From the IMG/VR virus record IMGVR_UViG_3300035180_001778, positions 124,001 to 188,000 of that record: 64,000 nucleotides of DNA; one strand, 5' to 3'. Below, piece by piece: positions 27,418 through 55,959 of the stretch. The notes beneath the pieces were generated by a model. The model had not been told where the DNA came from and ran no database searches. It saw only the letters and a list, made by a program, of their open reading frames with translations. Each line of letters begins with the position of its first letter. Position 1 is the first letter of the stretch. Made by a program: the position numbers and the translations under genes.

Positions 27418-27789
27418 TCAGACGCGGCTTTCCCAGTACTCGTCCTTCGACTCGTACAGCTCCATGTAATCCTCGATGCGATCCTTCAGGTTGTCCCGCC
27501 AGTTCTGGGTCCGCTTCACGATAGGCGCCTTGTCGGGCACCATCGGCCGGTCCTTGCCGAAGTTGTAGAACTGGACGCGGATCGCATCCTCCCCTTGGCC
27601 GGCTCCCATCCCCGAGTTGGGATGGATCGAAGTCCAGATCCGGATCCCGATGGTCTTCGCCTCGTTCAGGAAGAGGTTGATGACGACCTCCCCCCGGCTG
27701 GCCCCATGCTGAGGCCTGAGCGCCCGGAAGGCTCGCTTGAGGTACGTCTCCATCTCGGGCAACGTGATCTGCGTGAATTGAGCGGCCAT
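27418..27789 (-). CDS. Conserved phage hypothetical protein
   Basis: IRIWTSI...GEDAIRV...VKRTQNWRDNL; start overlaps the helicase stop. Confidence 0.7.
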   Translation of the reverse strand: MAAQFTQITLPEMETYLKRAFRALRPQHGASRGEVVINLFLNEAKTIGIRIWTSIHPNSGMGAGQGEDAIRVQFYNFGKDRPMVPDKAPIVKRTQNWRDNLKDRIEDYMELYESKDEYWESRV

Positions 27790-30700
27790 CACGCCCTCCG
27801 ATCGTACGAGGTGTCAACCCCGCCGGCTGTCATGAAGTAAGAAGCCATGTCCTCGAAGGGCGGGGGCCCATGATCCCCGAAGTCCCCCTCATCCTCAGCC
27901 GTCTTCGGAGTACCCACTTCCGCGGGCAGAGGAACGTCCTTCTCGACGTTCTCCCCCGGCTTGAGGCCTGCCTCGAAGACGAACCGTGAAGGTGCTTTGG
28001 CACAAACCACGGTGAGGTTCTTCGCGGCCCGGGTGAGAGCGACGTAGGCGAGATTCCGCTCCGCTTCGAGCTTCCTCAGCTCCTCTTCCGGATCCGGCGG
28101 GGGCTCATCCTTCTTGGGCTTCTTCTCGACCGGGAAGATACCCGCCGGCATGCACACGAAGACGTTCGGCCACTCGGCCCCCTTCACGCTGTGGACCGTG
28201 GAAAGGACCATGCACCGCGGACGCTCTTCCCGCTGCTCCGGCGGGAGCTTCTTCTGATCCAGAGCCCACTTCTTGAGGTCGACTCGAAGTGTCTTCGAGG
28301 CATCCGAGTAGCGCTCCAGCTTCTTGATGAAGCCCAGAGCCGTCGTCGGGTCGTGACCCAAGTCGTGGTCCTGCGCGTTCGGCTGTGCGATCTGGTAGAG
28401 GAACTGCACAGCTCCAAGCCCCTTGGCAGGGTTCTCCGGAGCGGGAGGTGCCGAAGGATCCCCAGGCTCTCCCTCCGTCTTGGGGAGCATGAGGTTGCCT
28501 TCGTCATCGACGACAGGCTTGACCGAGTCCGGCTCTTCCTCTTCCTCGGCGTCTTCGCTCCCATCCGAGTAGAGGGACATGTCATTCGAGATATGCTCTC
28601 GAAGAGTGACGGTCTTTCGGGTGTCCTCCCCCGTCCGGTTGTTGCGGTAGCCCGTCGTCGCCTTGACGTCGTCGAGGATGATCTTGAAAACATCCTCGAC
28701 GGGCATCGACGTGTCGTTGATGGTCTTCTTGAGCTTCGCGACCTGAGCCCCCATTTCGAGGAGGGTCTCCGTCATCTCGTCGACAGACTTCCGCCAGAGC
28801 CAATCCCCCGTGGCCATCAGCTTGTTCTTGTACGGCTGCTTGAGGGCTTCGGCGAGCTGGCGAGCGTAAACCCTCTTGGTGATCACCTCGAAGGGGTTGA
28901 GCGACTTCACGTCCATCCCGTCCCCACGAGCGATGTCCTGGAGAGCCTCCTTGACGATCTCGGCCACCTTGTCAGTCGAGAGGTAGAGACCACGATCCGG
29001 CTTCGTCAGGCTCGACGCCAACGAGAGCTGCATCTTCTCGAAGTTGGTCCCGCCCGCGAGGTCGAGGTAGCCAAGCACAGCCTTGGACTCAGGGGCTTCC
29101 AGGAAGCTCGACCCACCCACACGGGTGTACGGGATGCCCTCGATGATACAGGCCGTCTCGTAGTCGTTCAGCTCGTTGTTTGTACGAGCGAGAACAGCGT
29201 AGTCCTTCTCCTCGCTCGTCGGATTCGCACGAAGCTCCTTCGTGATCCGCTGAAGGGTATAGATGGCCCCAGAGGCGTTGTCCCCCGGCACCGTGACCTC
29301 GATCGAAGCTTCCTTGCGAGCCTTCTTCGGGTTCGCGCGAGCCTCCATCGGGATCTGGTTCGTGTTGTGGGCGACGAGCTTGTTGGCGCACTCGACGATC
29401 TCCGGAGCGCAACGGTAGTTCGTCTTGATCATCCGAGTCTTCCAGCCCTCCTTGCCGTTGAGGGCGGTGAAGAGATCCGGGCGAGCCCCGCGGAACTGGT
29501 AGATGGCCTGCTTGTCGTCACCGACCATCCAGAGGGACTTGCCGTCCTTGCCATCCGTGATGTGCTGAGACATCAGGTCGAAGACTTGGTGCTGAACCGT
29601 GTTGAGGTCCTGGCACTCGTCCACGAGGATGTGGTCGAACATGTTCTGAACCAAGGTGCGAGCCTTGGGGTCACGAACGAGGATGTCCCGGTAGACCTTG
29701 ACCATGTCGTCGAGATCCCCGAGTCGCTCCTTGCCCGGACGGAATGTGTCCATCCACTTGTCGGCGGTCTTGCTCTGCGAGCACGGCGGACGCCAGCCCG
29801 GGATGTCCCCCTTGAGACCCGAGCCGATGTGATACCAGATCGCCGCCTTGATCTCCTCTTTCGAGGTGGCATTGGCGAGCGCTTGCTCCGGAGAGACGTC
29901 GTTGCCCTTCCAGACGTTGATGAGCAAGCCAGCCTTCTTGGCGCTGGGAATGTCTTCCAACGCCTTCGGTTGGACCTTGTAGTAGGACGCCAGAGCCACA
30001 GGCCCACATTCCGTCCAGACACCCTTGATGGCCAGCGTGTGGTTGATGGGCTTCGGGCCACGCTTGAACTTCTGCCCCGGCTCCGGGTTGGCGATGAGCC
30101 GCTCCTCAGAGAAGAGCTTCTGCTCCTCTGGAGTACCGAAGGCCGGGATGTTGGACCCTCGATCGCCCACGATGAATCGCATGAAGAGCGAGTGCATCGT
30201 CCCCACGGACATCTGCTTCATCTCGTTCTCGCCGCACTTCTTGGCGATCTTGTCCCGCAGCTCGTTCGCCGCCTTCCGGTTGAACGAGCACGCCAGGATG
30301 CGGCCGGGCTTGACCCCGCGATCCTTGATGAGGTACTGAATTCGAGCGACCAGAGTCGTCGACTTCCCAGCCCCAGCTCCCGCGGCAATGAGAACCTTGC
30401 CGTCCGTGAGAGCTGCTCCCCGTTGCTCCGGGTCGAGGGAACGGAGGGGCTCCGGGACATTCTTCAGGTCTTCGGGGTCTGCCATGGCCGCTGCTACAGT
30501 TGCAGCCGCGATGCCAACAACCTGAGATTTCGTGACGGGAGCATCAGGCTCGTTTTTGGCGTCCAGAGACTTCAAGGCCGTCGCCTGAGCTTCCTCCTGA
30601 ACCCGCGAGATGATCTTGTCCTGGCGGTCTGTGGTGCCCTTCGTCTCCTCGGACGCAGGGTCGGCAGCTTCCGCCTTCATACGCTCGACGGCCAGCTCCT

Positions 30701-31301
30701 TGGACGCGTCGACCCGCCCGCCAGTTTGGCTAACCGCTGTCACAGGTGTCGGAGGAACCCCCGACCCTGCCAATTTGGCAGCCTCGTCGATCCAGTTCCG
30801 GATCCGGATGTTCTTGACGGGGATGACCGCGAACTTGTCGAGGGCGGCATCTGCATCGTCCACCATCGAGGCCGCGATAGCCGCTCGAACCTCTTGGAGG
30901 GCCTTGTTCGTGGAGAACACCGCCCGCATTGTCGAGGCACCACCCCGAGAGAGCAGGGTACGAATCTGGAGAGCCCGGCGAGCGGCCCCGTCCGGGGTCG
31001 GCCTCAGCCGAAGAGCCTTCTCCAGCATCTTCTTGTGGGTGTCCGACGGGAGGTTGGCTTTCATGAAGCCAGCGATGACCTCGCCGTGGAGCATGTCCGC
31101 CATTCGGAGCAGCTTCAGCCCGTTGGCCGTCATCTCGTCATGGGGGAGCCCAACCTCCTCCATGTACCGCATGTAGGTATCGAGGGCGAGAAGGAAGACC
31201 ACGTATTCGGCGATCTGGAGTTCGCCGAACGTCTTGTCGACCTCGACAACCTCTTCATCAGCGGCCTGACGACGGTCGTAGATCATCTGGGTGTCGTGCA
31301 T
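27789..31301 (-). CDS. UvrD/PcrA/Rep-family SF1 helicase with ~285-aa N-terminal extension
   Basis: Walker A AGAGAGKS, VDECQD, VGDDKQAIYQFRGA, NYRC, STVHSVKGAEW, ERNLAYVALTRA. Confidence 0.95.
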   Translation of the reverse strand: MHDTQMIYDRRQAADEEVVEVDKTFGELQIAEYVVFLLALDTYMRYMEEVGLPHDEMTANGLKLLRMADMLHGEVIAGFMKANLPSDTHKKMLEKALRLRPTPDGAARRALQIRTLLSRGGASTMRAVFSTNKALQEVRAAIAASMVDDADAALDKFAVIPVKNIRIRNWIDEAAKLAGSGVPPTPVTAVSQTGGRVDASKELAVERMKAEAADPASEETKGTTDRQDKIISRVQEEAQATALKSLDAKNEPDAPVTKSQVVGIAAATVAAAMADPEDLKNVPEPLRSLDPEQRGAALTDGKVLIAAGAGAGKSTTLVARIQYLIKDRGVKPGRILACSFNRKAANELRDKIAKKCGENEMKQMSVGTMHSLFMRFIVGDRGSNIPAFGTPEEQKLFSEERLIANPEPGQKFKRGPKPINHTLAIKGVWTECGPVALASYYKVQPKALEDIPSAKKAGLLINVWKGNDVSPEQALANATSKEEIKAAIWYHIGSGLKGDIPGWRPPCSQSKTADKWMDTFRPGKERLGDLDDMVKVYRDILVRDPKARTLVQNMFDHILVDECQDLNTVQHQVFDLMSQHITDGKDGKSLWMVGDDKQAIYQFRGARPDLFTALNGKEGWKTRMIKTNYRCAPEIVECANKLVAHNTNQIPMEARANPKKARKEASIEVTVPGDNASGAIYTLQRITKELRANPTSEEKDYAVLARTNNELNDYETACIIEGIPYTRVGGSSFLEAPESKAVLGYLDLAGGTNFEKMQLSLASSLTKPDRGLYLSTDKVAEIVKEALQDIARGDGMDVKSLNPFEVITKRVYARQLAEALKQPYKNKLMATGDWLWRKSVDEMTETLLEMGAQVAKLKKTINDTSMPVEDVFKIILDDVKATTGYRNNRTGEDTRKTVTLREHISNDMSLYSDGSEDAEEEEEPDSVKPVVDDEGNLMLPKTEGEPGDPSAPPAPENPAKGLGAVQFLYQIAQPNAQDHDLGHDPTTALGFIKKLERYSDASKTLRVDLKKWALDQKKLPPEQREERPRCMVLSTVHSVKGAEWPNVFVCMPAGIFPVEKKPKKDEPPPDPEEELRKLEAERNLAYVALTRAAKNLTVVCAKAPSRFVFEAGLKPGENVEKDVPLPAEVGTPKTAEDEGDFGDHGPPPFEDMASYFMTAGGVDTSYDRRA

Positions 31302-33062: not shown

Positions 33063-33560
33063 TCACTCGTAGCCCTCGATGACCCACTTCTGGTATTCCT
33101 TTTCCAACCAGGAATCCAGAGGCCCCGAGTGTCGGAAGAGATACTCCCTGTAGGTCGTCCCCGTCCGATAGTCCCGAGTCCCCGGCGGAGCCACTCGACC
33201 CGTTGCATCGTACTCGACGCCGACGTTGAAGAAGTCCGCCAGCTCTTCCTCGATGCGACCTTGAGCCCAGCGGGCAAAGGGACCGATCGGCCCATGGCGG
33301 AAAGCCACCCGGCTCGGCTGGAGTGCCACCACGAACCCCACAGCCTCATCCTGGCAGAAGAAGGGAAGCTTGCGAGTCTCTTCCGTGGAGACCGCTGTGC
33401 CCGGGAGGAAGACCATCCAGACGGGACCCCCATCCTCGAAGGACGTGAGGACGATTTTCCAGTCTGTATTCAACGTCCGAGCAACCGCAGCCGTGAGGGT
33501 TGCCTCGAAGGCCTCTTCAGTCAGCTCGCCAGGGAGGTCGATGTAGCCGTAGTTCGCCAT
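33063..33560 (-). CDS. Hypothetical protein
   Basis: 165 aa; GGTGTA-N10-ATG start. Confidence 0.7.
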   Translation of the reverse strand: MANYGYIDLPGELTEEAFEATLTAAVARTLNTDWKIVLTSFEDGGPVWMVFLPGTAVSTEETRKLPFFCQDEAVGFVVALQPSRVAFRHGPIGPFARWAQGRIEEELADFFNVGVEYDATGRVAPPGTRDYRTGTTYREYLFRHSGPLDSWLEKEYQKWVIEGYE

Positions 33561-33605
33561 TGAGGGATCTTACACCGACCCCAAAATCCCGCACCCCAAA
33601 TAGGC

Positions 33606-33639
33606 GAAGACCCCCAAGATAGCCTTCCGGGGGGTCCTC
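33606..33639 (-). terminator. Stem-loop, probable 3' end of the ncRNA
   Basis: GAGGACCCCCCGGA-aggcta-TCTTGGGGGTCTTC GC-rich hairpin; the U-tract is weak. Confidence 0.6.
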
Positions 33640-33690
33640 TAGTGCCGCTTTTTACACGACGTCACAGCGTTGGATCAGATTCAAGCTTAG

Positions 33691-33788
33691 ACACCACGTC
33701 CTACCGCTAGACCACCTCCCTGCGAGAAGCTCGACCCATGTACGAGCGCCTTGCAGGGAGGGCGGGATTTGAACCCGCGTTTTGGCGT
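33691..33788 (-). ncRNA. Permuted tRNA-like domain 2
   Basis: ACGCCA-AAAC-[GCGGGTTCAAATCCCGC]-CCTCCCTGC...GCAGGGAGG-TG-[GTCTAGCGGTAGGAC]-G-TGGTGT; 9-bp acceptor stem and 6-bp closing stem. Confidence 0.85.
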
Positions 33789-33854
33789 ATTGACCTGACC
33801 CTTAGATTGATGTCGTATCGGTTCTGCTGAGTCTGGAGTGAGAAGAAGAATCGT

Positions 33855-34001
33855 TTCCCCTCGCCTTTGCCTCTGCCGTCTGGGCTATCCCCCTACTCAA
33901 CCACCCAATGCGCTTTGCTAAACCCCAGTGAAGGAGCCCACACACTGACTGGCTGAATAGGGGGAGCAGGAATCGAACCTGCCCTTTTGGGGAGAGAGGG
34001 T
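33855..34001 (-). ncRNA. Permuted tRNA-like domain 1
   Basis: [GCAGGTTCGATTCCTGC]-TCCCCCTATTCAGCCA...TGGTTGAGTAGGGGGA-TA-[GCCCAGACGGCAGAGGC]; 16-bp extended acceptor stem. Confidence 0.85.
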
Positions 34002-34062
34002 TACTGAAGCTGACTCTTACTCTGAGACTGCACTCAAATCTTTAGTACACCATATCTCGACG

Positions 34063-34797
34063 CTAGGCGAAGAGATTGTGGAGAATCGTCGCCCCGATGT
34101 GGCGGTTCTCGACCTCGATGGTGTTGGCCTCCTCACGCGCGAACTTCACGGCGATCCGGAGCTTCGAGACGCGGTCCTTCAGCACGTTGACCCGAGTCGC
34201 CGTGAGGGCCCCCGAGCGCTTGACGACCGTGTACTGTCCGACCGCCTTGTCCTCGTGGAAAATCTCGGTCTGCGCCGGATGGTACTGGGTGGGCTCCGCC
34301 TTCGTGATGACGGTGGGCGTCTTCCGCGTCCGCTGCGTGATGGCCGGAGCCGTGGCGAAGCAGGCCTGGTTCTCGTCGTAGGTCCACGACTCGGCCGGGT
34401 CGAGCGTCGGGAGCGAGCCGATGAACGTGGTGAGGTCGTCGAGCTGGTGCTCCAGGAAGAGCAGCACGCCGACGGGGACATCCGCGAGGATGACCTTCCC
34501 ATCCACGACGATGTTCGCTCGCGCGATGGTGTTCCCCCACTCCTTCGTGGCCGTGATGTCGAAGGCCTCCGTGAGGACCTTCACCGTGTGCTCGATGGCA
34601 TCCGCGGCCTTGAGCTGGACGTGCTTCAGCTCCGGCGGGAGCCGCTCTTCCTGCGTGTCTGAGAAGGGCGCGTAGGTCCGCGAGAACCCTTCGAGCTGCG
34701 CCGGCTTCTTCAGCTCCTTGTGGTAGGTCTTCAGCTCGTCGTACGCCTTCGACTTGAGACCCTTTTCGACCGCGATGATCTGGCAAAGCTTGCCCAT
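34063..34797 (-). CDS. Conserved protein of unknown function (244 aa), adjacent to the tRNA-mimic RNA
   Basis: MGKLCQIIAVEKG...SRTY.P...LPPE...DVPV..LLFLE.QL...LPTLDP...HPAQ...SGA...AVKFAREEAN; recalled as a family seen in Actinobacteria and other bacteria; very GC3-rich. Confidence 0.85.
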   Translation of the reverse strand: MGKLCQIIAVEKGLKSKAYDELKTYHKELKKPAQLEGFSRTYAPFSDTQEERLPPELKHVQLKAADAIEHTVKVLTEAFDITATKEWGNTIARANIVVDGKVILADVPVGVLLFLEHQLDDLTTFIGSLPTLDPAESWTYDENQACFATAPAITQRTRKTPTVITKAEPTQYHPAQTEIFHEDKAVGQYTVVKRSGALTATRVNVLKDRVSKLRIAVKFAREEANTIEVENRHIGATILHNLFA

Positions 34798-34936
34798 GAT
34801 GAAAACCTCTTCTGATTCGATTTGCTGATGCTGATGACCCGAGCCCTCTACACCACGTCCCCGACGTAGCATCGATTTTATGGAGAGGTTGATCGGGGCC
34901 CCCTCTTGGGTGTAGGCTTTTCACGAGGCACACCCC

Positions 34937-36939: not shown

Positions 36940-38187
36940 TTACTGAGTTTTCAGAAGATCAGATTTCTGAAAACTCAGCACTTCTGAAGAGATACGATTT
37001 CTCAAAAAAGATTCGTCGGCGTACGGTTCGTCCTCTCGGACAGAGAAGAGCTGCATCCCCGACGCTTTCGCCAGCTCAACCTTAGCCTTGTCTCGCGCCT
37101 GAAGGGCGTCGAACTCCTCTCGTTCCGTGACGTAAGTGCTCGGGAACAGCCAGTGCTGAACACCATGGAACTCGACGAGGAGCTGATGGCTGGGGAAGTA
37201 GCCGTCGAAGCGGAACCGACGCCCCGTCTTCGGGTTGGTAAAGCGAGGGTCGGACCACTCGACTTCGTAGGACGCCCCACCCAGGATCCGTGAGACCATC
37301 TCCAGGCAGATTGCCTGCTGTATGGCCGTGTGAGAGATGGGCATCCCGTGCTTCTCGCACTCCCTCCGAATCGTCACGAAGGCGTGCCCAAGAGCCGCGA
37401 TGGCCTTCCCCACCGAGACCTTCCCGTTCTTGAGCCGGAAAGGAAGGAGCTGCTCCCTGGTCAAGGAGACCTCAGTTCCGTTCGTCCAGTGTTGCACCTT
37501 TCGAGTTTCAGAAAGAGCGGCACCTCGTTGACGAACCACATCTGAGGTCTCTTTGGTGAGCCCCTTAAAATGGGAAACGAAGTCATCAGGCCGAGCGCCC
37601 ATACGCGCTACTCGGGGATCGGTCTCCTTCGTCAGACCTGCATTCCACCGGCCGGCATTGGCGGACATCTTCGCTCGGGTATCCTGCGAGAGAGCTTGCC
37701 CCTTGAGGTAGGACTTGTCTCGGGTGCCGCACCGTTGAGACATGACCTCCCCCTCGTACGCCATGTCTGGATGCGCGTTCTGAAGATGGCTCACCAGGCT
37801 CTCAGCCCGATACCCACAAATCTGGCAGATGACGTAGTCAAGCCCCTCCTCTTTCAAAGCCCAGAACTCTTCCACGTCCCGACCTCGGCACTCAGGACAT
37901 CGCGTGTCATGCACCGAAGCGGCGAAGGTGTACCCCACCTCCCGCGGAGCATCGCAGGAAGAGCAAAGGATGGTCTTCTTCAGACCCGCCCGCGGCTTGG
38001 TCGCATGAGATTGAGCCGCCGCAGCCTGACGCTTCTCGGTCAGGGCTTCAGCTCGAATGAGGGCTTGGGGGTGTTTGGCTCGGTAGGCATCCGCCGTCAG
38101 CCCATGCTTCTTCAGATGGGTGGCCAGCGTCGATGCCTGAAACCCGCACTCACGGCACTGAACGAAATCACGATTCTCAACAAGCAT
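36940..38187 (-). CDS. Putative homing endonuclease (C2H2 Zn fingers, NUMOD3-like repeats, Vsr/DUF559-like nuclease)
   Basis: CREC..HLKKH, CQIC..HLQNAH, WNAGLTKETD repeats, RFDGYF...VEFHGVQH...D..K. Confidence 0.75.
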   Translation of the reverse strand: MLVENRDFVQCRECGFQASTLATHLKKHGLTADAYRAKHPQALIRAEALTEKRQAAAAQSHATKPRAGLKKTILCSSCDAPREVGYTFAASVHDTRCPECRGRDVEEFWALKEEGLDYVICQICGYRAESLVSHLQNAHPDMAYEGEVMSQRCGTRDKSYLKGQALSQDTRAKMSANAGRWNAGLTKETDPRVARMGARPDDFVSHFKGLTKETSDVVRQRGAALSETRKVQHWTNGTEVSLTREQLLPFRLKNGKVSVGKAIAALGHAFVTIRRECEKHGMPISHTAIQQAICLEMVSRILGGASYEVEWSDPRFTNPKTGRRFRFDGYFPSHQLLVEFHGVQHWLFPSTYVTEREEFDALQARDKAKVELAKASGMQLFSVREDEPYADESFLRNRISSEVLSFQKSDLLKTQ

Positions 38188-38297: not shown

Positions 38298-41200
38298 CTA
38301 AATGCGTGCGCGAAGGTTAAATGAGAGGACCAAGAAGAGCAGCGGGAAGACCGGCTGGTAGAACGCCTGGAACCGAAGGATGGTCGGGTCGTTCGGATCG
38401 ATGGCCGATGCGATGCCCGAGAAGGCGCCCACGATCTCCGCCTGGACGAGCTGCTTGAAGAGGCCCGTCATCGAGACGTTGACCTCGTTGGTCCGGCTCG
38501 CGAGGAACTTGGAACCGACGAAGGAATCGAGGACGATGCGGCTCTGCTGTTGCACATAGTCGGCGATCTGAGTGACCGTCGGGAGGCGCGTCAGCGGAGA
38601 CGACATGTTGGTGGTGAGCCCCTGCCGGATGCGAACAAGCGGCTGGAGGTCCTCCAAGAGCGTGATCCCCGCGGCGGCCGTCTGGTTGGCCTCGACGGGA
38701 TCCATGATGCGCGGGATGCGCGTGAAGTTGACGATGCGACGCCGAGTCCAGGGCGTCGCCACATCGACCGAGGGAGACACGACAGCTCCAGCGACGGCCG
38801 CTGCAAAGAACGTCCCATCCACGAGGGAGTCGAACGTCTGCCCCAGAGCATCCGAGAGCGTGATGACAGCCGAGTCCGGGTAGAACATGGCCATCCGGTT
38901 CGAGTTCAGGCTCCGAGCGATGGTCTGCGCGTTGGTCGGGCTCGTCCCCGAAGCAAAGCCGCAGAAGCCCATCCGCTCCGCCTGGTTGCGGATGTGAGAC
39001 TGTGTCTCGACGTGCTGGGTGAGCCGCGAGTAGACCGCCGTCGAGGTCGCCAGAGGCACGAGGATGTCGGGCTTGACGTTGCCGGGCAGAGGCGTCTTCA
39101 GCTCATCGATCGCGTCGAGGAAGGAGACGTCCGTTGCCTGAGCGGTGTTCGCCGCCTTCATGACCTGCTTGATCCCGACGAGGAGAGCCCCGTTGGTGAT
39201 CGCAAGATAAGCCGCGAGGCTCACCCGGTTCTCCGCACTGACCAACCCGAAGTTCTGCTCGATCGTCTTGATCGTGCGGAAGATGCGGGTCGAGAAGTCC
39301 TGCTTGAGGAAATTGTAGGTGATGTAGTAGAAGTCACCCACCTTCGGCTCGACCCCACCCGGGTTGAACGTCTGGACGGTGGCCGTGTCGTTCACCGCGA
39401 CGCCGACCGTGTTGGCGACCCCCAGCTCCAACCCAGCGATTGCCAGGAAGGGGCGTGAGGGGTCGACCGCGAACGTCGGGGTGACGAGGAGCGTGAAAGT
39501 CCCCGCCGCATCGTACCCACCCGTCGTTGCGGGAAGGACCGTGAAGCGAAGCCCCGTCTGCGCGTCCGTGTACGTCTGGCCGGGGATGCCCGTACCAGCC
39601 GAACCAGAGGCGTTGTTCGAGGAGACCACGAAGTTGTCCTGCGCGTCTTCGCCGTTGTCCCCGTCCACCCCAGCCGTGAGCCCGATGCCCGTCGTCGCGT
39701 TGAACGCGGAGTTGGCCACCGTGTTGAAGACGATGCTGCTCGAAGCCGCTCCGACCGTCAGGGACTCGAAGGTGATGTAGTTCGAGCCGTTGATGGTATC
39801 GACGTACGCAACCCCATCGGTGAGGAAGCCCGCGGTGGCGAGGAGCGCGTCCACAACCTCCTGAGCCGACACGAGGGTCTGTGAGCCCTGCGCGTTCTGT
39901 GCGAACCCGAGAACCACATTGGCCGTCCCATCGAGGATGAGAACCGACGACTGCGGGTCGTTCGTCGAGGAGGTGAGGCGGAGCTTGTCGAGGTTGATCC
40001 CCGTACCCGCCGAAGCACGTCCCGTGGCCACAGCGTTGATGGCCGAGACCACCGCAGAGGTCGCAACCGTGGCACCCGCGGGGAGCGTCACCAAGTACTG
40101 CGCCCCGTTGACGCGGAACTTGAAGGTGTCGTTCACGCCAGCGGTGATGTTGAACGGACCGACCAGAGACCCGAGGAGCGTTGCGGGCTTGTTGATGGCC
40201 CCCGTCGTCCCATGCGAAGACTGGAAGGTCGTGAAGCCGAGGAGCGTCTCTGCCGTCCCCTGGGAAACCATGACCGTCGAGATGTCATCGAACCCGCCAG
40301 GAAGAGCCCCGGGGGTCGTGTCGCTCTTGACCACGAAGAAGACGTCACCCGTCGAGCCACCGATCTGGTGGAAGCTCGCGAGCGTGTTGGGAGCCGTTCC
40401 CGAGAACGGAGCGGTCGCATCGATGACAGCGTTGATGTCCGCGACGAGCTGCGTCGGAGTCCGGTAACCGACCGTGAGGGGGACGTTGATGAGGCCGTTG
40501 CCGCCCGTCATCCCCACCACAACGAAGCCAGCGTTGGCCACCGTCTCGGTGATGGCAGCATTGCCCACCGTTCCAGTTGCCCCGTTGACGAGAGCGACCT
40601 TGGTCGAACCTCCGATGGAGGCCGTGATGGCAAGCCCAGCTCCGACACCGTTGATCGCAGAGATCATCGCGTCGCGAACCGTGCCCACCGAATCGAGCGA
40701 GGTGAAGGCGACCGCAACATTCCCAGAGGCAACGCCACCCCCAGAATCGAACTCGAAGATCGACGGAGGGTTCACCCCATCGTCAAGAGTGAACGTCTCC
40801 CCATCGACGAGGAGGGAGCCCGCCACCGTCGTGATGAGTCCGCTCGCCGCCAGAACCCCCGCGTTGATCGAGAGGTTGAGGACGTTGGCCGGGGAAGCCG
40901 GGATGAGGATCTTGCCCGAGTTGCCGCCCGACTGAACCGGCACGACATGGCCCGAGACCAGGAAGGCCGGAGCTGCCGACGCAAGGTTCGTCGCCTGGGT
41001 GTTCCCGTTGATCCCCATCGACCAGGTGGCCGAGGAAGGAGCGTAGAACGAGTAGGGCTCCGCGAGGTTGTTCGTGAAGGCCGCGTTCGTTGCCGCAGCG
41101 GATCCGAAGGTCACGGTGACCGTCTCGACAACGGGAGTACCCGTTCCCGAGTGGAAGGCATCCGGAACCGTCTCGACCCCACGGGGCCACTGAACCGTCT

Positions 41201-42956
41201 CGCTGAGAGACGACTTCGAGCCGAAGCGGACCTGAAAGAGGTTCGTGTTCTGCTGAACCGAGAAGACCTCGTACTGCCCCATCCCAACGGCTCCAGGAAC
41301 CGTGCAAGTGAGGATGTAGGTGTCGTCCACGATCCGGTTGTAGTTGAACGTCGCGTAGGCGTTCCAGTCCGGGGGGACAGCATCCCGAAGACGAAGCAGA
41401 CGCGAGGCACCGTCCACCGTGAGAACCTTCACGGCTGCTCGACCCAAGGCATCCCGGAGAGTCCGGCCCACGAAGACCTGGATCAGATCCGGGCGGTTCG
41501 TGATGAGGTCCTGGCGGTTGTTGGTGATCGAGGCGTAGAGCGAGTTGCCGAGAGGCGTCGACCGACCGTTCCCCGTGGTGGGGATCTCAGGGAGACGGAA
41601 GTCCGTCGTCGAGACCTTCGCCGGGAGAACGGACGTGTCAGTCACCCTCGCGCAAGTCGCGAGGTAGAGCTTCTCATCGACGAGCGACCCGACGATCTGA
41701 GACTCGTTGAACGGCGTGGACCCGGGGGACGTCTTCGTGGAAGCGACCACGAAGCTCGTTCCCCAGTGTATGATCGAGACATCCGCCGAAGGATTCGAGA
41801 CAACGAAGTCCTGCCCCTGAATGAAGTCCGAACGACCGTTCGAGATACCGCAGCGGGCAACCGTGGTGACGAACGTGTTGGGGAGGTAGTCGAACGTGTC
41901 CTGCCAGGTGTTGGCCCAGTATTGAACCGTGACCACAGCTCCGCGAGCGGGAGGCGTGGCAAGGGTCACAACACCGTTGGTCCCATCGACAGACGTCGGG
42001 ATGACCTGAGCACCGTTGACCTTGACGACCACCTTGGAGGGGTCCGTCGTGGTGATTCCACCGCTCGTCCCATCGACGATGGGACGCTGGAAGACACGGA
42101 AGCTCAGGTTCCTCGACGTCTTCGTGTTCGCCAGGAAGCCGAGGGGACCGTTGGCCGAACCAGACCCGATCTCCAGCGAGACAGGAGAGGTGAGCGCGAC
42201 GTGCTTGAGCCCCTGGTTGTCCGTCGACACCGCTGTCTGAAGGTTGGGGATGATCGCTGCATCGATCTGGCTCTTGACGTTGGACGCCGTGAGGGAGCCC
42301 GCGGTGAGCGTAACCGTGTACGACGTGCCGCCGACCTTGACGACGAAGCTGTCATTGGAGCCGGTCGTGACGAGGAAGGGCTCGAACCCAGGGGACGTCA
42401 GAATGGCGTCCAGGTTCGTCACCTGATCCGAGACGTCGTCCGTGAATGCCGTGTCTCCCCGGTGGAAGAAGTAGGTCACTCGAACGACGTCCGTCGGCTG
42501 AGGCGGAATCTGAAGCGTGATGAGGCCCTTGGCACCCTGGACTGCCCCGAGAGCAACAGGCAGCCCGTTGACCGTGATCGAGGAGATGTCCTTGGTGGCG
42601 TTCGAGACCCGACCAAGGCCGCTGCCATCGACGATGGGGAAGTTGCGGACGCGGAACTGAGTCCGGGTCCCATCCTGCGCCCCGAGGATGAGGTTCTGGG
42701 GGTTCGTCGCATCGGCGACCCATGCCAGGCTCGGGTCCTCATTGACGATCTGCTGATCGATGGAAGCGCTGCTCCCTCGGACCAGTTCCAGGTCGTCTTG
42801 CACCAGTTCTTCTTGACCCACCCCGATGATCGCGGGGATCCGCAACCCACCCAGGATGTTGGTCACGTTCGCGTCTGCGAACGTCTGGGTGTAGACACCG
42901 GGGTTCATTTCCGGCGTGGGGGTGAACGTTTGGAACGGTCCGTTTCCAGTGGCCAT
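38298..42956 (-). CDS. Tail sheath protein with large inserted domains (1552 aa)
   Basis: N-terminal PGVYTQT..PAIIGVG; C-terminal sheath core (AAAVAG...AGITLLE...RIRQGLTT...ADYV...YQPVFPL). Confidence 0.9.
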   Translation of the reverse strand: MATGNGPFQTFTPTPEMNPGVYTQTFADANVTNILGGLRIPAIIGVGQEELVQDDLELVRGSSASIDQQIVNEDPSLAWVADATNPQNLILGAQDGTRTQFRVRNFPIVDGSGLGRVSNATKDISSITVNGLPVALGAVQGAKGLITLQIPPQPTDVVRVTYFFHRGDTAFTDDVSDQVTNLDAILTSPGFEPFLVTTGSNDSFVVKVGGTSYTVTLTAGSLTASNVKSQIDAAIIPNLQTAVSTDNQGLKHVALTSPVSLEIGSGSANGPLGFLANTKTSRNLSFRVFQRPIVDGTSGGITTTDPSKVVVKVNGAQVIPTSVDGTNGVVTLATPPARGAVVTVQYWANTWQDTFDYLPNTFVTTVARCGISNGRSDFIQGQDFVVSNPSADVSIIHWGTSFVVASTKTSPGSTPFNESQIVGSLVDEKLYLATCARVTDTSVLPAKVSTTDFRLPEIPTTGNGRSTPLGNSLYASITNNRQDLITNRPDLIQVFVGRTLRDALGRAAVKVLTVDGASRLLRLRDAVPPDWNAYATFNYNRIVDDTYILTCTVPGAVGMGQYEVFSVQQNTNLFQVRFGSKSSLSETVQWPRGVETVPDAFHSGTGTPVVETVTVTFGSAAATNAAFTNNLAEPYSFYAPSSATWSMGINGNTQATNLASAAPAFLVSGHVVPVQSGGNSGKILIPASPANVLNLSINAGVLAASGLITTVAGSLLVDGETFTLDDGVNPPSIFEFDSGGGVASGNVAVAFTSLDSVGTVRDAMISAINGVGAGLAITASIGGSTKVALVNGATGTVGNAAITETVANAGFVVVGMTGGNGLINVPLTVGYRTPTQLVADINAVIDATAPFSGTAPNTLASFHQIGGSTGDVFFVVKSDTTPGALPGGFDDISTVMVSQGTAETLLGFTTFQSSHGTTGAINKPATLLGSLVGPFNITAGVNDTFKFRVNGAQYLVTLPAGATVATSAVVSAINAVATGRASAGTGINLDKLRLTSSTNDPQSSVLILDGTANVVLGFAQNAQGSQTLVSAQEVVDALLATAGFLTDGVAYVDTINGSNYITFESLTVGAASSSIVFNTVANSAFNATTGIGLTAGVDGDNGEDAQDNFVVSSNNASGSAGTGIPGQTYTDAQTGLRFTVLPATTGGYDAAGTFTLLVTPTFAVDPSRPFLAIAGLELGVANTVGVAVNDTATVQTFNPGGVEPKVGDFYYITYNFLKQDFSTRIFRTIKTIEQNFGLVSAENRVSLAAYLAITNGALLVGIKQVMKAANTAQATDVSFLDAIDELKTPLPGNVKPDILVPLATSTAVYSRLTQHVETQSHIRNQAERMGFCGFASGTSPTNAQTIARSLNSNRMAMFYPDSAVITLSDALGQTFDSLVDGTFFAAAVAGAVVSPSVDVATPWTRRRIVNFTRIPRIMDPVEANQTAAAGITLLEDLQPLVRIRQGLTTNMSSPLTRLPTVTQIADYVQQQSRIVLDSFVGSKFLASRTNEVNVSMTGLFKQLVQAEIVGAFSGIASAIDPNDPTILRFQAFYQPVFPLLFLVLSFNLRARI

Positions 42957-53522: not shown

Positions 53523-53972
53523 TCAGTCCTCCAAGGTGGACTCTGACGCCCTTGGCTGAGACCACCCCGACTTGCCTTCGATGCGATCCTTGAGGGCCTC
53601 TGCGAACGCCTGGGGGTCCGTCACATGCCCTTGGACCTTCGCGACGCACCTTGCAACAGACCCTCCAATGCTCTCCCAGAACTTCTTCCGGGAGTCATCA
53701 GTCCACCCTTCAGGAAGGTCTTTCCACTCCGCAGCTTGATGAGCTGTGGCCGCGAGCTTGAGCATGTCCTGCCCATAGATGACCGACGCGCGAATTCGGC
53801 GGATCCCCAGAGAAGCCATACGCTGCCCACAAGGCGGGCAGACCTCGGCGACATCCTCGGGGTTCAACCAGAAATCCTGGTTGAGGGCGACCTTCTTTGA
53901 CCCCGAGTAGCGATGAGCCACCCGAGAGGTCAAGTCAGAACCAGCCGCGTCGTGTTTTTCGGGGAGTGCCAT
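53523..53972 (-). CDS. Hypothetical protein, candidate internal virion protein (start uncertain)
   Basis: TSRVAHRY tag, KVA site, CPPC, LPEGWTDDS.KKFW. Confidence 0.6.
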   Translation of the reverse strand: MALPEKHDAAGSDLTSRVAHRYSGSKKVALNQDFWLNPEDVAEVCPPCGQRMASLGIRRIRASVIYGQDMLKLAATAHQAAEWKDLPEGWTDDSRKKFWESIGGSVARCVAKVQGHVTDPQAFAEALKDRIEGKSGWSQPRASESTLED

Positions 53973-55959
53973 CGTTTGGATCTTTCGCAAGAACAGCATC
54001 GAGGATGCTGAACCTGTAGTCCTCAACAAGAGGTTGAGTAGAAGGACTTAGTTGATACCGCCATCGGATCAACCAGTCCCCAGGCTGGCCCACATCATCA
54101 GACCGGAAGGTTGCGTAGTACTCTCCGACCGTTGCCATGACAGGGTAGCGTTCGGGGGAACCCACAAGCTGTTGAGAGCCTCCGGGATGCACCTGGAACA
54201 AGCTGTATGTCACTCGGTACAGCGAGCTGGGGGCTCCGTCGAGGCGCAGCAAGAAGCTCAAGTCGCCACGGCCGAAGACATGGCCAAGTCGGAACTCCCT
54301 GTACTTCTGGTGGCAACGAACGGGCCTCGGGACATGGACGAGATCCAGGTAGCCCGACAAGAGCCCCATGCCTGCCAGGGCTTCCAGCTCGGAAAGCTGG
54401 AGCCCGCCATACCCAAAAACATCCCCTATGAGCGAACGAATGAGAGCGACATTGCCTTGAAGATCGCCACCCCCAAAAGCATGGGCCGTCGGGTTCATCA
54501 CGATGCTGAGAGAACCCTGAAGCGTCCCCACTCCGAACACAACCCCAATAAAGCCAACGTCAATCAACGCACCAGAGAAGTCGCTCACCCCATCGGAGGT
54601 CCCGGACACGGAATGCACGTTGACGATAACGCCATGGAAGACCCCATCCCCGAAGGGATGCCCAGAGACACCCAAGAATCTCTGCATAGATTCCTGGGGT
54701 GCCCCGACGCCTCCCACGGACTCGGAGAAGGACAGGGTCCGAATGAGGGTGTCCTGAATCAGGCCTGAGCCCCCACTTGCGCCAGCGAGTGAGCCGAGAA
54801 TGAGAAGGGTTCCTTGCAAGCTACTGGAGCCCGCGACCAGCCCTGCAAAGTCGGCCGCTCGTAGAGCCCCTTGAGGCGACCCCTGACCAGAGGCGAGACC
54901 CTGCAACAAATGGGTCAACAGGAGGGCCTCTTGCACATCCCCGGCACCAAGAGGGGAACCTCCCAAAGAGAGACCTCGGATAAGAGGCGCTTGAAGAAGC
55001 CCTGCCCCCAGGATGCTACCCGAGAGGGGCATCGTATCTCGGACACCCCCAGAGAAAGAGGCACCCCCCGAGATTGTTCTCGCGAGCGAGATGGTGTGCA
55101 GCATTGTCCCTTGAAGGATAGCGGCACCCAACGTAGTTGAGGCGAGACGATGAATCAAGCCGACTACAGTCTGTGCAGACCCGGCCCCCACAATGGACCC
55201 TGAGACCAGCTTTGTCTGGATCACAGTCCCTTGTAGGCTCCCTGCCCCCGTCCCTGTTTGAGAGAGAGAGACCGTCCGAATGGGGGAGATTTTGGAAGGT
55301 ACGAAGGGGTAGACGATGGGCGGGTGGGGCTGGACAACCGCAGAAGTGATCGTCGGAGCTGCATTGTAGTAGTCAACGTTGTCCCGCATCATCGGGATGT
55401 AACTGACTGCTTTTGTAGGGGCGAAGAAGGGGGACGTGTTCTTCGACAGATACGAAATCACCGCCTGTGTATAGGTGCCGCTCCAATGGGCATACTCGGC
55501 GAGCTGCCCATCGAAAGCTCGCGACCCCGTCGGTTGATTACCGAGCACATAAATGCCCGTGGACGTGATTGCAGGGAGAGTCGTCCCAAAAGCTACGTTT
55601 GTCGTTACTTGTGCAACGCCATCAACATACAGGGTCGGGACATTCGACAACGAGGACTCGTTGTACACGAGGAGAAGATGGATCCATGTATTGGCGGCCG
55701 TACCCCCCGTGAAGTACCACTGCCCTGTCCCAGCCGTGAAGACACGGAGGAACTCCCACCGAGCATTGATACCATTCCACCGGAACTGAGTGATGAACGC
55801 CCCACCGTTCTGTTTTTGATACACACGTCCGAGGCTCCCACCCCCAGGACCCGTCCGGTATACCCAAATACTGTATGTGGAGTTGGTAGTGTGCGTCGTG
55901 TAAGCAGTGTTGCTTACATCAAGCTGCCCTGTCCCAGACAACCCAAAACCAAGAGACAT
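53935..55959 (-). CDS. LamG/concanavalin-like domain protein with Gly-rich repeats (fibre/decoration)
   Basis: YSIWV...NTWIHLLLVY...LYVDG...LGN...FDGQLAE; ~22-aa G.G.LQG.L repeats; C-terminal Ig-like domain like the N-terminus of 52622. Confidence 0.75.
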   Translation of the reverse strand: MSLGFGLSGTGQLDVSNTAYTTHTTNSTYSIWVYRTGPGGGSLGRVYQKQNGGAFITQFRWNGINARWEFLRVFTAGTGQWYFTGGTAANTWIHLLLVYNESSLSNVPTLYVDGVAQVTTNVAFGTTLPAITSTGIYVLGNQPTGSRAFDGQLAEYAHWSGTYTQAVISYLSKNTSPFFAPTKAVSYIPMMRDNVDYYNAAPTITSAVVQPHPPIVYPFVPSKISPIRTVSLSQTGTGAGSLQGTVIQTKLVSGSIVGAGSAQTVVGLIHRLASTTLGAAILQGTMLHTISLARTISGGASFSGGVRDTMPLSGSILGAGLLQAPLIRGLSLGGSPLGAGDVQEALLLTHLLQGLASGQGSPQGALRAADFAGLVAGSSSLQGTLLILGSLAGASGGSGLIQDTLIRTLSFSESVGGVGAPQESMQRFLGVSGHPFGDGVFHGVIVNVHSVSGTSDGVSDFSGALIDVGFIGVVFGVGTLQGSLSIVMNPTAHAFGGGDLQGNVALIRSLIGDVFGYGGLQLSELEALAGMGLLSGYLDLVHVPRPVRCHQKYREFRLGHVFGRGDLSFLLRLDGAPSSLYRVTYSLFQVHPGGSQQLVGSPERYPVMATVGEYYATFRSDDVGQPGDWLIRWRYQLSPSTQPLVEDYRFSILDAVLAKDPNDGTPRKTRRGWF

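What the first reader, a model, noticed from the sequence alone, without database searches (positions are those of the whole stretch)
34002..34838. 6-nt-periodic CAG repeats at the ncRNA 5' end and in the protein gene's own leader
Seen: the 5' part of the ncRNA reads GCAGTC TCAGAG TAAGAG TCAGCT TCAGTA, with AG every 6 nt (plus-strand ctg/ctt at 34004, 34010, 34016, 34022, 34028). Unlike the leaderless GGTGTA genes, the protein gene has a ~41-nt leader after GGTGTA (34849-34854) containing CATCAG CATCAG CAAATC GAATCAG just before its RBS. Known: periodic short repeats are bound by oligomeric RNA-binding rings such as TRAP and Hfq. Inference: the protein oligomerises on hexamer repeats, one per subunit, and autoregulates its translation, titrated by the ncRNA.
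Basis: partly seen in the sequence, partly recalled or inferred. Interest (0 to 1): 0.8.

Follow-up and report, generated by a model that had tools for sequence, protein, structure and literature searches.

The report
Hexamer arrays on a tRNA-mimic RNA
The 6-base repeats are real and conserved, and they belong to a large, apparently undescribed non-coding RNA made of two rearranged tRNA look-alikes that sits next to a protein of unknown function (DUF7873) in many phages and hundreds of bacterial species.

Summary
On the minus strand, 34004-34030 carries five NAG at exact 6-nt spacing. The DUF7873 mRNA leader (34813-34837) carries three similar AUCA(G) units, the last one abutting the Shine-Dalgarno sequence.

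The periodicity is a family trait. Across 36-83 homologous loci the RNA 5' region shows a strong lag-6 signal, with unit consensus RRYUNA. The invariant bases are U and A, not CAG.

The "ncRNA" (about 34037 to 33598, minus strand) is a roughly 440-nt structured RNA. It holds two circularly permuted tRNA-like modules (variable region, T arm, closed 7-bp acceptor, D arm) tied together by covarying long-range helices. Its only Rfam resemblance is a sub-threshold match to YrlA, the bacterial Y RNA. There is no Ro60 gene; the constant neighbour is DUF7873, in 44 of 45 viral and 76 of 80 bacterial loci.

Tandem hexamers occur in 28% of DUF7873 5'UTRs against 3.6% of control UTRs, so self-regulation is plausible only in some lineages. 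Protein binding to the hexamers, oligomerisation and titration remain inference: the protein fold matches nothing solved and no RNA-seq run was listed.

The parts
34063..34797 (-). DUF7873 protein gene (244 aa, ATG 34797-34795, stop 34065-34063)
   Evidence: Pfam PF25283, E 1.3e-90, full length. More than 2,500 90%-identity clusters and 2,722 50%-identity clusters, all about 243-250 aa with no fusions.
34849..34854 (-). GGTGTA promoter-like motif upstream of the DUF7873 gene, leaving a leader of about 40-45 nt
   Evidence: The motif occurs 25 times in the window against 9.2 expected, with 0 of 100 shuffles reaching 25.
34806..34837 (-). mRNA leader units UCAUCA (34832-37), GCAUCA (34826-31) and GAAUCA (34813-18), directly followed by the SD GAAGAGG (34806-12)
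   Evidence: Family-level enrichment of tandem TNAR units in DUF7873 5'UTRs: 28% against 3.6%.
34046..34051 (-). GGTGTA motif directly upstream of the ncRNA (putative own promoter)
   Evidence: The transcription start is inferred, not measured.
33598..34037 (-). Whole structured ncRNA (about 440 nt; ends inferred)
   Evidence: MFE -188.8 kcal/mol, z = -5.07, 0 of 100 shuffles fold as well, and both permuted cloverleaves appear in the MFE. The homologous RNA is aligned in A3, where 39 of 47 consensus pairs show compensatory changes.
34031..34035 (-). P1 5' strand, GAGUG
   Evidence: Pairs with CACUC at 33836-33840. Across loci it covaries as GAGCG:CGCUC, GAGCA:UGCUC, GAGUG:CACUC, GAGUA:UACUC and GAGAA:UUCUC.
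34005..34028 (-).
33857..33999 (-). tRNA-like module 1 (permuted). Anticodon-stem 3' strand 33991-33999; T arm 33966-33982; acceptor 3' strand UCCCCCU 33959-33965 plus A73 at 33958; 64-nt linker hairpin 33895-33957; acceptor 5' strand AGGGGGA 33888-33894; D arm 33869-33885; anticodon-stem 5' strand 33857-33865.
   Evidence: CM R1, built without this locus, scores it 50.2 bits, E 2.5e-15, on L003 (the window's own contig). In the window with filters off it scores 25.1 bits, E 6e-7. No ARAGORN or Rfam gathering hit.
33836..33840 (-). P1 3' strand, CACUC, inside the conserved mid motif (family consensus UUAUYGCUCYAG)
33795..33835 (-). Mid region: further units (CAGACUCAGCAG), P-a 5' strand UACGAC 33812-33817, conserved loop AUCAAUC (family AUCGACC) 33805-33811, P-b 5' strand GGGUCAG 33795-33801
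   Evidence: Long-range helices mid:tail covary in A3 (columns 195-200:363-368 and 208-216:343-352). The window assignment is by homology plus the fold.
33691..33788 (-). tRNA-like module 2 (permuted). Anticodon-stem 3' strand ACGCCA 33783-33788; T arm 33762-33778; acceptor 3' strand CCUCCCU 33755-33761; 33-nt linker; acceptor 5' strand AGGGAGG 33715-33721; D arm 33698-33712; anticodon-stem 5' strand UGGUGU 33691-33696.
   Evidence: CM R1 28.2 bits, E 5e-8.. The T arm matches the tmRNA T-arm segment only.
33655..33692 (-). Tail: units GUCUAA GCUUGA AUCUGA (33675-33692), P-b 3' strand CUGAUCC 33672-33678, CCAACG (family CUUAAACG), P-a 3' strand GUCGUG 33655-33660
33608..33637 (-). GC-rich hairpin (GGACCCCCC...GGGGGUCU) followed by a U-poor tail; probable 3' end
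   Evidence: The simple terminator scan did not call it.

Best explanation
The repeats are arrays of a 6-nt unit (RRYUNA). They sit on the single-stranded strands of a roughly 440-nt ncRNA that is the obligate genomic partner of the DUF7873 protein.

Architecture of the RNA (shown):
- A 5' helix P1 encloses the leader hexamer array and a first circularly permuted tRNA-like module, ordered variable region, T arm, closed 7-bp acceptor, D arm.
- A mid region with more units follows.
- Next comes a second permuted tRNA-like module, whose 'anticodon stem' is prolonged by two mid:tail helices with conserved internal loops.
- This is the architecture of a bacterial Y RNA (YrlA), duplicated, but without Ro60.

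Proposed mechanism (inferred):
- DUF7873 binds the hexamer arrays, with several copies or surfaces in 6-nt register, forming an RNP.
- The tRNA-like modules are recognised by tRNA enzymes. RNase P would cut at the acceptor 5' strands and the 3' ends would be trimmed or CCA-tailed, as shown for M. smegmatis YrlA. Alternatively, the modules recruit a tRNA-binding partner.
- In lineages such as this phage, 2-4 units of the same kind lie against the SD of the DUF7873 mRNA. Protein in excess of the RNA could then repress its own translation.
For: RNA structure:
- Two T arms about 150 nt apart lie downstream of nearly every homolog.
- The acceptor stems are 7/7 paired yet differ in sequence between loci.
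- Each module folds as a permuted cloverleaf.
- Formal covariation on A4: acceptor, T and D stems are 100% paired, 19 of 22 pairs change on both sides, covariation score 0.566 against 0.177 in shuffles (0 of 500 reach it) and 0.11-0.23 when partners are slid.
- RNAalifold on A3 gives 39 of 47 pairs with compensatory changes, including the mid:tail helices. P1 also covaries.

Linkage to the protein:
- CM hits lie downstream of DUF7873 in 76 of 80 bacterial and 44 of 45 viral loci.
- In the 64-kb window the CM hits only this locus.

Hexamers:
- Searches show the periodicity and consensus.
- They are not coding: 1-nt indels occur between units and there is no lag-3 signal.
- Family-wide they are not explained by pairing with other strands of the RNA.
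- They are retained in Streptomyces RNAs that have lost module 1.

5'UTR units: 28% against 3.6%, p = 2e-4; 0 of 300 shuffle sets reach the observed fraction.

tRNA-like processing signals: A73 in 76 of 84 module 1 copies, CCA following in 41 of 84, and +1 mostly G.

YrlA precedent: the same V-T-AS-D order, and RNase P cleavage plus CCA addition of the 7-bp acceptor in M. smegmatis (PMC4201824). Sub-threshold YrlA hits fall on both modules.
Against: - There is no direct evidence that DUF7873 binds RNA at all. Its pI is about 6 with net charge about -2, and no RNA-binding fold is recognised.
- No expression data exist: no RNA run was listed.
- 72% of 5'UTRs lack tandem units, and the Streptomyces genes are leaderless.
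- In this window's own lineage the leader array is more complementary to the pyrimidine-rich strand opposite it than shuffles are (z -2.0 to -2.8), so here the units may be partly base-paired.
- Herpetosiphon has the gene without an adjacent RNA.
Confidence: 0.45

Rival explanations
1. The hexamers are structural elements of the RNA itself, for example a periodic imperfect helix or tertiary contacts between the strands that flank the module-1 stem. DUF7873 would bind elsewhere, such as the conserved loops or the tRNA-like modules. The UTR units would then be unrelated to the protein.
For: - UNA is quasi-palindromic, so U:A/A:U pairs between two units would keep both bases invariant without visible covariation.
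- In the window's lineage the MFE pairs the leader array with the opposite strand in 2-5-bp blocks, with z -2.0 to -2.8.
- In 12 of 20 loci inspected by eye, the first leader unit can pair with the last mid unit (sequences).
Against: - Family-wide, duplex energies of the array with strand B, with the post-P1 region or with the tail are no better than shuffles (mean z -0.33, -0.75, -0.36).
- The covariation scan found no conserved leader helix other than P1.
- The two strands have unequal numbers of units.
- This reading does not explain the enrichment of the same units at the SD of the DUF7873 mRNA.
Confidence: 0.25
2. The arrays are docking sites for another factor, such as the ribosome or S1, Hfq, RNase E, or a tRNA-targeting nuclease for which the RNA acts as a decoy. 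DUF7873 would then be an enzyme or chaperone acting on the tRNA-like modules.
For: - In phages the locus sits inside tRNA gene arrays, often beside tRNA-Lys genes.
- DUF7873 has many invariant polar and acidic residues (Q6, Q61, N89, E116, E222, N225, HPAQ) and is not basic.
Against: - In bacteria the locus sits among ordinary chromosomal genes, not in a defence or phage setting.
- No catalytic fold is recognised.
- The UTR units argue for a factor that regulates this particular gene.
Confidence: 0.17
3. It is a tmRNA-like, multi-piece translation factor. The modules would be cut, CCA-tailed and aminoacylated, then enter the ribosome, with the hexamer region serving as a message.
For: - The gene order is permuted, as in two-piece tmRNA.
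- ACCA follows the module 1 acceptor in half of the loci.
- The tmRNA model matches the T arms.
Against: - There is no ARAGORN or Rfam tmRNA call.
- G3:U70 is not conserved.
- There is no conserved reading frame: stop codons, 1-nt indels and no lag-3 signal.
- GodonK already has a canonical tmRNA.
- Module 1 is dispensable in some Streptomyces.
Confidence: 0.05
4. The repeats are a chance or low-complexity feature of this one phage.
For: Within the window alone the expectation is small but not negligible: 2 of 100 and 4 of 100 shuffles reach the observed counts.
Against: The arrays are conserved in over 80 independent loci from phages to Actinomycetota, Chloroflexota and Deinococcales.
Confidence: 0.01

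Closest known systems
YrlA / bacterial Y RNA with Ro60 (Rsr) (Rfam RF02553; Chen et al. 2014, PMC4201824)
   Same: - The tRNA-like domain has the same circularly permuted order: variable region, T arm, closed acceptor stem-loop, D arm.
- M. smegmatis YrlA has a 7-bp acceptor, is cut by RNase P and receives CCA.
- Y RNAs occur in tandem, on the same strand as the partner protein gene.
- They occur in both bacteria and actinobacteriophages.
- YrlA is the only Rfam family that hits both modules.
   Different: - Scores are 27-38 bits against a gathering score of 69, and the window itself gives no hit.
- The partner gene is DUF7873, not a TROVE/Ro60 protein.
- The window RNA has no GNCGAA motif.
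- Two modules are joined in one RNA by P1, P-a and P-b helices.
- RRYUNA hexamer arrays are not a described Y RNA feature.
Two-piece (circularly permuted) tmRNA
   Same: The T arm and 3' acceptor strand (often with CCA) are encoded upstream of the 5' acceptor strand. Intervening segments are variable and sometimes long.
   Different: No tag reading frame, no G3:U70, no tmRNA pseudoknot architecture by Rfam or ARAGORN, and no SmpB partner.
TRAP with the trp leader, and autogenous translational repressors in general
   Same: Short units repeat at a fixed spacing on single-stranded RNA. A copy of the site overlaps the RBS region of a regulated mRNA.
   Different: - The unit is RRYUNA at period 6, with 4-5 per array, not 11 (G/U)AG triplets.
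- The protein is a 244-aa alpha/beta protein unrelated to TRAP or Hfq.
- A ring or other oligomer has not been shown.
Cas7/RAMP backbone subunits of CRISPR effector complexes
   Same: They bind RNA with a strict 6-nt register. RAMP and Cas7 chains recur among the weak Foldseek hits in two libraries.
   Different: All hits are non-significant (E >= 0.04, TM 0.1-0.17), and Cas7 chains do not appear among the 50 top-Z entries of the VIA re-alignment. This is a lead only.

Membership tests
YrlA (Y RNA-like, RF02553) | tRNA-like domain in the order V - T arm - acceptor stem-loop - D arm | tested here: met
   for both modules.
YrlA (Y RNA-like, RF02553) | Reaches the Rfam gathering score (69 bits) | tested here: not met
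   27-38 bits in homolog loci. No YrlA hit at E <= 10 in the window.
YrlA (Y RNA-like, RF02553) | Encoded within about 4 kb of a Ro60/TROVE gene on the same strand | tested here: not met
   No TROVE hit among the 21 window ORFs scanned: all 12 non-overlapped ORFs of >=420 aa plus 9 smaller ones around the locus. None within +/-8 kb in two bacterial chromosomes. The neighbour is DUF7873.
YrlA (Y RNA-like, RF02553) | GNCGAAN0-1G motif near the 5' end (putative Ro60 site) | tested here: not met
   No minus-strand GNCGAA between 33598 and 34040.
YrlA (Y RNA-like, RF02553) | Bound by Ro60; modified or processed by tRNA enzymes | not testable with these tools
   Needs immunoprecipitation, RNase P and CCA-addition assays.
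tmRNA (one- or two-piece) | Detected by ARAGORN or Rfam RF00023; tag reading frame; G3:U70 | tested here: not met
   Only the T arms match RF00023. 3:70 is C:G or G:C in most loci. No conserved frame.
Canonical tRNA | Contiguous cloverleaf with an anticodon loop | tested here: not met
   ARAGORN finds 0 genes in the window. The modules lack an anticodon loop and are permuted.
TRAP-type or Hfq-type ring binding periodic repeats | Protein of the TRAP or Sm/Hfq fold | tested here: not met
   Pfam gives only DUF7873. No TRAP or Hfq chain appears among the listed structural matches.
TRAP-type or Hfq-type ring binding periodic repeats | (G/U)AG triplets with 2-3-nt spacers (TRAP) or A-R-N tracts (Hfq) | tested here: not met
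   The unit is RRYUNA with invariant U and A.
TRAP-type or Hfq-type ring binding periodic repeats | Homo-oligomer with one RNA unit per subunit | not testable with these tools
   Only a monomer model could be made.
Cas7/RAMP | Significant structural similarity to a RAMP core | tested here: inconclusive
   Recurrent but non-significant Foldseek hits. Not recovered by VIA-align.
DUF7873 (PF25283) | Full-length match above the Pfam cut-off | tested here: met
   303.9 bits against a cut-off of 27.

The most novel reading that the evidence does not exclude
DUF7873 plus this RNA is a widespread, so far unrecognised ribonucleoprotein class of bacteria and large phages. It would be a second kind of 'Y RNA' particle, in which a non-Ro protein loads in 6-nt register onto hexamer arrays of a multi-piece scaffold made of two processed tRNA mimics. 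The particle would act in tRNA or RNA surveillance, or in phages in protecting or supplementing the tRNA pool. The hexamer copy in the mRNA leader would give built-in feedback.
Probability: 0.3. Interest if true: 0.85.

Novelty: new variant of a known kind. Interest (0 to 1): 0.75.

Why it matters
- It gives a first functional handle on a large DUF: about 2,700 clusters at 50% identity, at least 588 bacterial species, and many jumbo or tRNA-rich phages.
- It defines a roughly 350-450-nt structured RNA that is absent from Rfam 15 and from the searched literature.
- It extends the concept of tRNA-mimicking Y RNAs beyond Ro60.
- It offers an unusually clean, testable protein-RNA code: invariant U-N-A every 6 nt, with natural variants lacking module 1 or lacking the UTR sites.
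- For phage biology it flags an unannotated RNA gene inside the tRNA arrays of sequenced actinobacteriophages such as GodonK and Racecar.

Tried and rejected
- ARAGORN and Rfam at gathering thresholds found nothing in the window.
- PHROGs gave no family for DUF7873 or its neighbours.
- PDB sequence search gave nothing meaningful.
- Structure searches gave no significant relative outside the protein's own family:
  - Foldseek against the PDB, VIA second look, VIA wide, AFDB clusters and the ESM Atlas were all tried.
  - The Cas7/RAMP lead from Foldseek was not confirmed by VIA, so it is kept only as a lead.
- Coding explanation for the hexamers:
  - In this phage a 10-codon GTG...TAA frame spans the array.
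  - It was rejected because other loci have in-frame stops and 1-nt indels, and there is no lag-3 signal.
- Antisense pairing between the RNA's units and the UTR units was rejected by eye: both have the same sense (UCAG in both).
- Leader:mid and leader:tail duplexes are not better than shuffles across the family.
- Un-permuted reading (5' half of module 1 with 3' half of module 2) was rejected: those acceptor strands are not complementary.
- RNA-seq evidence:
  - Only DNA metagenomes hold the sequence.
  - No RNA run was listed.
- Literature searches for DUF7873, YrlA and phage tRNA-like RNAs found no description of this RNA.

Full report
OBSERVATION

Read on the minus strand, the stretch after the DUF7873 stop codon contains GGTGTA (34046-34051).

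The gene's leader follows a second GGTGTA (34849-34854). It reads GUCAUCA GCAUCA GCAAAUC GAAUCA GAAGAGG, then 8 nt, then AUG (34797).

In the window alone, five AG at period 6 occur twice against 0.16 expected. Four TNAR at period 6 occur once against 0.05 expected. GGTGTA itself is over-represented, 25 against 9.2 expected.

WHAT THE GENE IS

The ORF 34063-34797(-) is a full-length DUF7873 protein (PF25283, E 1e-90). It has no PHROG family and no paper in the library mentions the family.

The family is large and uniform. It has more than 2,500 clusters at 90% identity and 2,722 clusters at 50% identity, nearly all 243-250 aa and without fusions.

It occurs in large phages. The window's own contig is 350 kb, and Gordonia phage GodonK and Arthrobacter phage Racecar also carry it. 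It also occurs in at least 588 bacterial species, including Streptomyces, Kitasatospora, Dactylosporangium, Chloroflexota, cyanobacteria and Deinococcales. In two complete chromosomes it lies among ordinary housekeeping genes.

WHAT THE RNA IS

Downstream of almost every homolog lie two T-arm motifs about 150 nt apart. After each T arm comes a 7-nt strand, then a linker of 6-90 nt, and then its exact complement followed by a D arm. The 7-bp stems differ in sequence from locus to locus yet are 7/7 paired.

Each unit folds as a cloverleaf that is circularly permuted and lacks an anticodon loop. Its order is anticodon-stem 3' strand, 5-nt variable region, T arm, closed acceptor, D arm, anticodon-stem 5' strand.

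Covariation supports these stems:
- On alignment A4 (28 loci) the acceptor, T and D stems are 100% paired.
- 19 of 22 pairs change on both sides.
- The covariation score is 0.566, against 0.177 in shuffles (0 of 500 reach it) and 0.11-0.23 when partners are slid.
- On the full-length alignment A3, RNAalifold finds 47 pairs, 39 of them with compensatory changes. These include two long-range helices between the mid region and the tail.

I found a further helix, P1, between a 5' GAGYR motif and a YRCUC in the conserved mid motif UUAUYGCUCYAG. It covaries as GAGCG:CGCUC, GAGCA:UGCUC, GAGUG:CACUC (this window, L004, L006), GAGUA:UACUC and GAGAA:UUCUC.

A covariance model of module 1, built without the window, gave these results:
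- It finds the window's two modules and nothing else in 64 kb.
- It finds modules downstream of the gene in 76 of 80 bacterial loci and 44 of 45 viral loci.
- Herpetosiphon lacks an adjacent RNA.
- Twelve Streptomyces loci have module 1 replaced by a plain hairpin while keeping P1, the hexamers and module 2.

The window RNA folds with z = -5.07, and both modules appear in the MFE.

ARAGORN and Rfam call nothing at their thresholds. The only family with sub-threshold hits on both modules is YrlA, at 27-38 bits against a gathering score of 69.

Signals typical of tRNA genes are kept:
- The discriminator is A in 76 of 84 module 1 copies, with CCA following in 41 of 84.
- Module 2 has U or G at that position.
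- The +1 base is usually G.

In phages the locus is embedded in tRNA arrays on the same strand.

THE HEXAMERS

In 36-83 RNA leaders, identity at lag 6 is 0.41-0.43 and at lag 12 is 0.37-0.38. Other lags give 0.20-0.29, and there is no lag-3 signal, unlike the coding control.

Chains of at least 3 U-N-A at period 6 occur in 81% of viral leaders against 1.3% of shuffles. The unit is RRYUNA, and U and A are invariant in A3. The mid region is also periodic, with lag-6 identity of 0.38, and the tail holds 2-3 units.

The units are not codons: one-nucleotide indels occur between units in 5 of 19 sequences.

Across the family they are not a disguised helix. Duplex energies of the array with the facing strand, with the post-P1 segment or with the tail are no better than dinucleotide shuffles (mean z -0.33, -0.75 and -0.36). 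The window's own lineage is an exception, with z about -2 to -2.8. Here the array may be partly paired with a pyrimidine-rich strand.

THE mRNA LEADER

Two or more tandem TNAR units lie within 50 nt of the start codon in 11 of 39 DUF7873 genes. The comparisons are:
- 10.9% in shuffles, with 0 of 300 shuffle sets reaching the observed fraction.
- 3.6% of random windows.
- 3 of 83 5'UTRs of other SD-bearing ORFs in the same loci, Fisher p = 2e-4.

By eye in the 5'UTR sequences, the units run straight into the SD in several loci, for example L006, L038, L044 and L053; L112 also carries four units close to its start codon. The Streptomyces genes are leaderless, and a group of Arthrobacter-type phages has ACGAC repeats at 7-nt spacing instead. 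The feature is therefore real but lineage-specific.

THE PROTEIN

The AF2 model is confident (pLDDT 86.7). It shows a beta-alpha-beta-beta-alpha-beta core, a long beta-hairpin and long helices.

No solved structure matches significantly. Weak Cas7/RAMP hits recur in two libraries but are not confirmed by VIA-align. The protein is slightly acidic overall and has one basic strand, RTKKVPR. No TROVE/Ro60 protein was found among the window ORFs scanned, and the RNA lacks the GNCGAA motif of YrlA.

MECHANISM

Shown:
- The RNA architecture.
- The genomic linkage of RNA and protein.
- Conserved single-stranded hexamer arrays.
- Enrichment of the same units at the SD of the protein's mRNA in a subset of loci.

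Inferred:
- DUF7873 binds the arrays in 6-nt register.
- The tRNA-like modules are processed or recognised like tRNAs. The precedent is M. smegmatis YrlA (PMC4201824).
- Surplus protein represses its own translation where UTR units exist.

Rivals are an RNA-structural role for the units, another binding factor, and a tmRNA-like role. No expression data could be obtained.

VERDICT

The object is best filed as a new variant of the Y-RNA-like tRNA-mimic RNPs. It has a new protein partner and a new repeated element, and it is not a member of YrlA by any of the tested defining features except the fold order.

Noticed in passing
L072:2270-2560 (Streptomyces flaveus) and 11 other Streptomyces loci (L080, L092, L093, L097, L106, L108, L119, L120, L123, L129, L132): In L072 (read) module 1 of the RNA is replaced by a simple hairpin (GCGCGGUCCC-GGAUCA-GGGACCGCG), while P1, the hexamers, the mid motif and module 2 are kept. 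The other 11 loci are inferred from their single CM hit. These look like natural deletion variants, showing that the first tRNA mimic is dispensable.
   Followed up: partly
L001:1086-1614 (Gordonia phage GodonK, record 84555-85236 region): Rfam finds a full-length tmRNA (90 bits) that is not annotated in the record. The 62-nt feature annotated 'tRNA-His' (locus 1165-1226) lies inside it and is not called by ARAGORN, so it is probably a mis-annotation.
   Followed up: no
L002, L009, L015, L017, L032, L044, L046, L051, L055, L056: tRNA-Lys (UUU or CUU) genes are very often the nearest tRNA gene upstream or downstream of the DUF7873/RNA locus in phages. In L046 and L051 (and an unassigned tRNA in L030) a normal tRNA gene (tRNA-Lys in L046 and L051) occupies the place of module 2.
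   Followed up: no
window 33895-33957 (-): The 64-nt linker inside the module 1 acceptor contains GGGGUUUAGCAAAGCGCAUUGGG. The covariance model aligns this as an alternative, degenerate acceptor-5'/D-arm. It may be a relic of a duplicated 5' half. In the MFE the linker simply extends the acceptor into a long hairpin.
   Followed up: partly
window, 25 sites, e.g. 33571-33576(-), 34046-34051(-), 34849-34854(-), 34909-34914(+): GGTGTA is over-represented (25 against 9.2 expected). It sits 7-10 nt before start codons of apparently leaderless genes, for example GGTGTAAGATCCCTCA-ATG at 33560. It is probably this phage's promoter -10 region (TGT-extended).
   Followed up: partly
window 34001-34033 (-): A 10-codon frame GUG CAG UCU CAG AGU AAG AGU CAG CUU CAG UAA exactly spans the hexamer array. 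It is not conserved in other loci (in-frame stops, indels) and is probably incidental.
   Followed up: yes
L002:3640-3703, L009, L015, L017, L032 (5'UTRs): Arthrobacter-type phages carry (A/G)AACGAC repeated 2-3 times at 7-nt spacing in the DUF7873 5'UTR, in place of RRYUNA units.
   Followed up: no
L113:2215-2400 and L074, L075 (Herpetosiphon): Here the DUF7873 gene is followed by a terminator and an ADP-ribosylglycohydrolase-like ORF (read by eye) instead of the RNA. The 5'UTR still holds AUUCAAAUUUAU next to the SD. Whether the RNA is encoded elsewhere in these genomes could not be checked.
   Followed up: no
window 27789-31301(-), 36940-38187(-), 53935-55959(-), 38298-42956(-): Context genes: a UvrD-type helicase, a protein with an N-terminal ROS/MucR zinc-finger domain, a Laminin_G_3 (ConA-like) protein, and a 1,552-aa protein with a weak DUF2460 (tail-like) match. 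This is consistent with a jumbo phage. Most large ORFs have no Pfam family.
   Followed up: no
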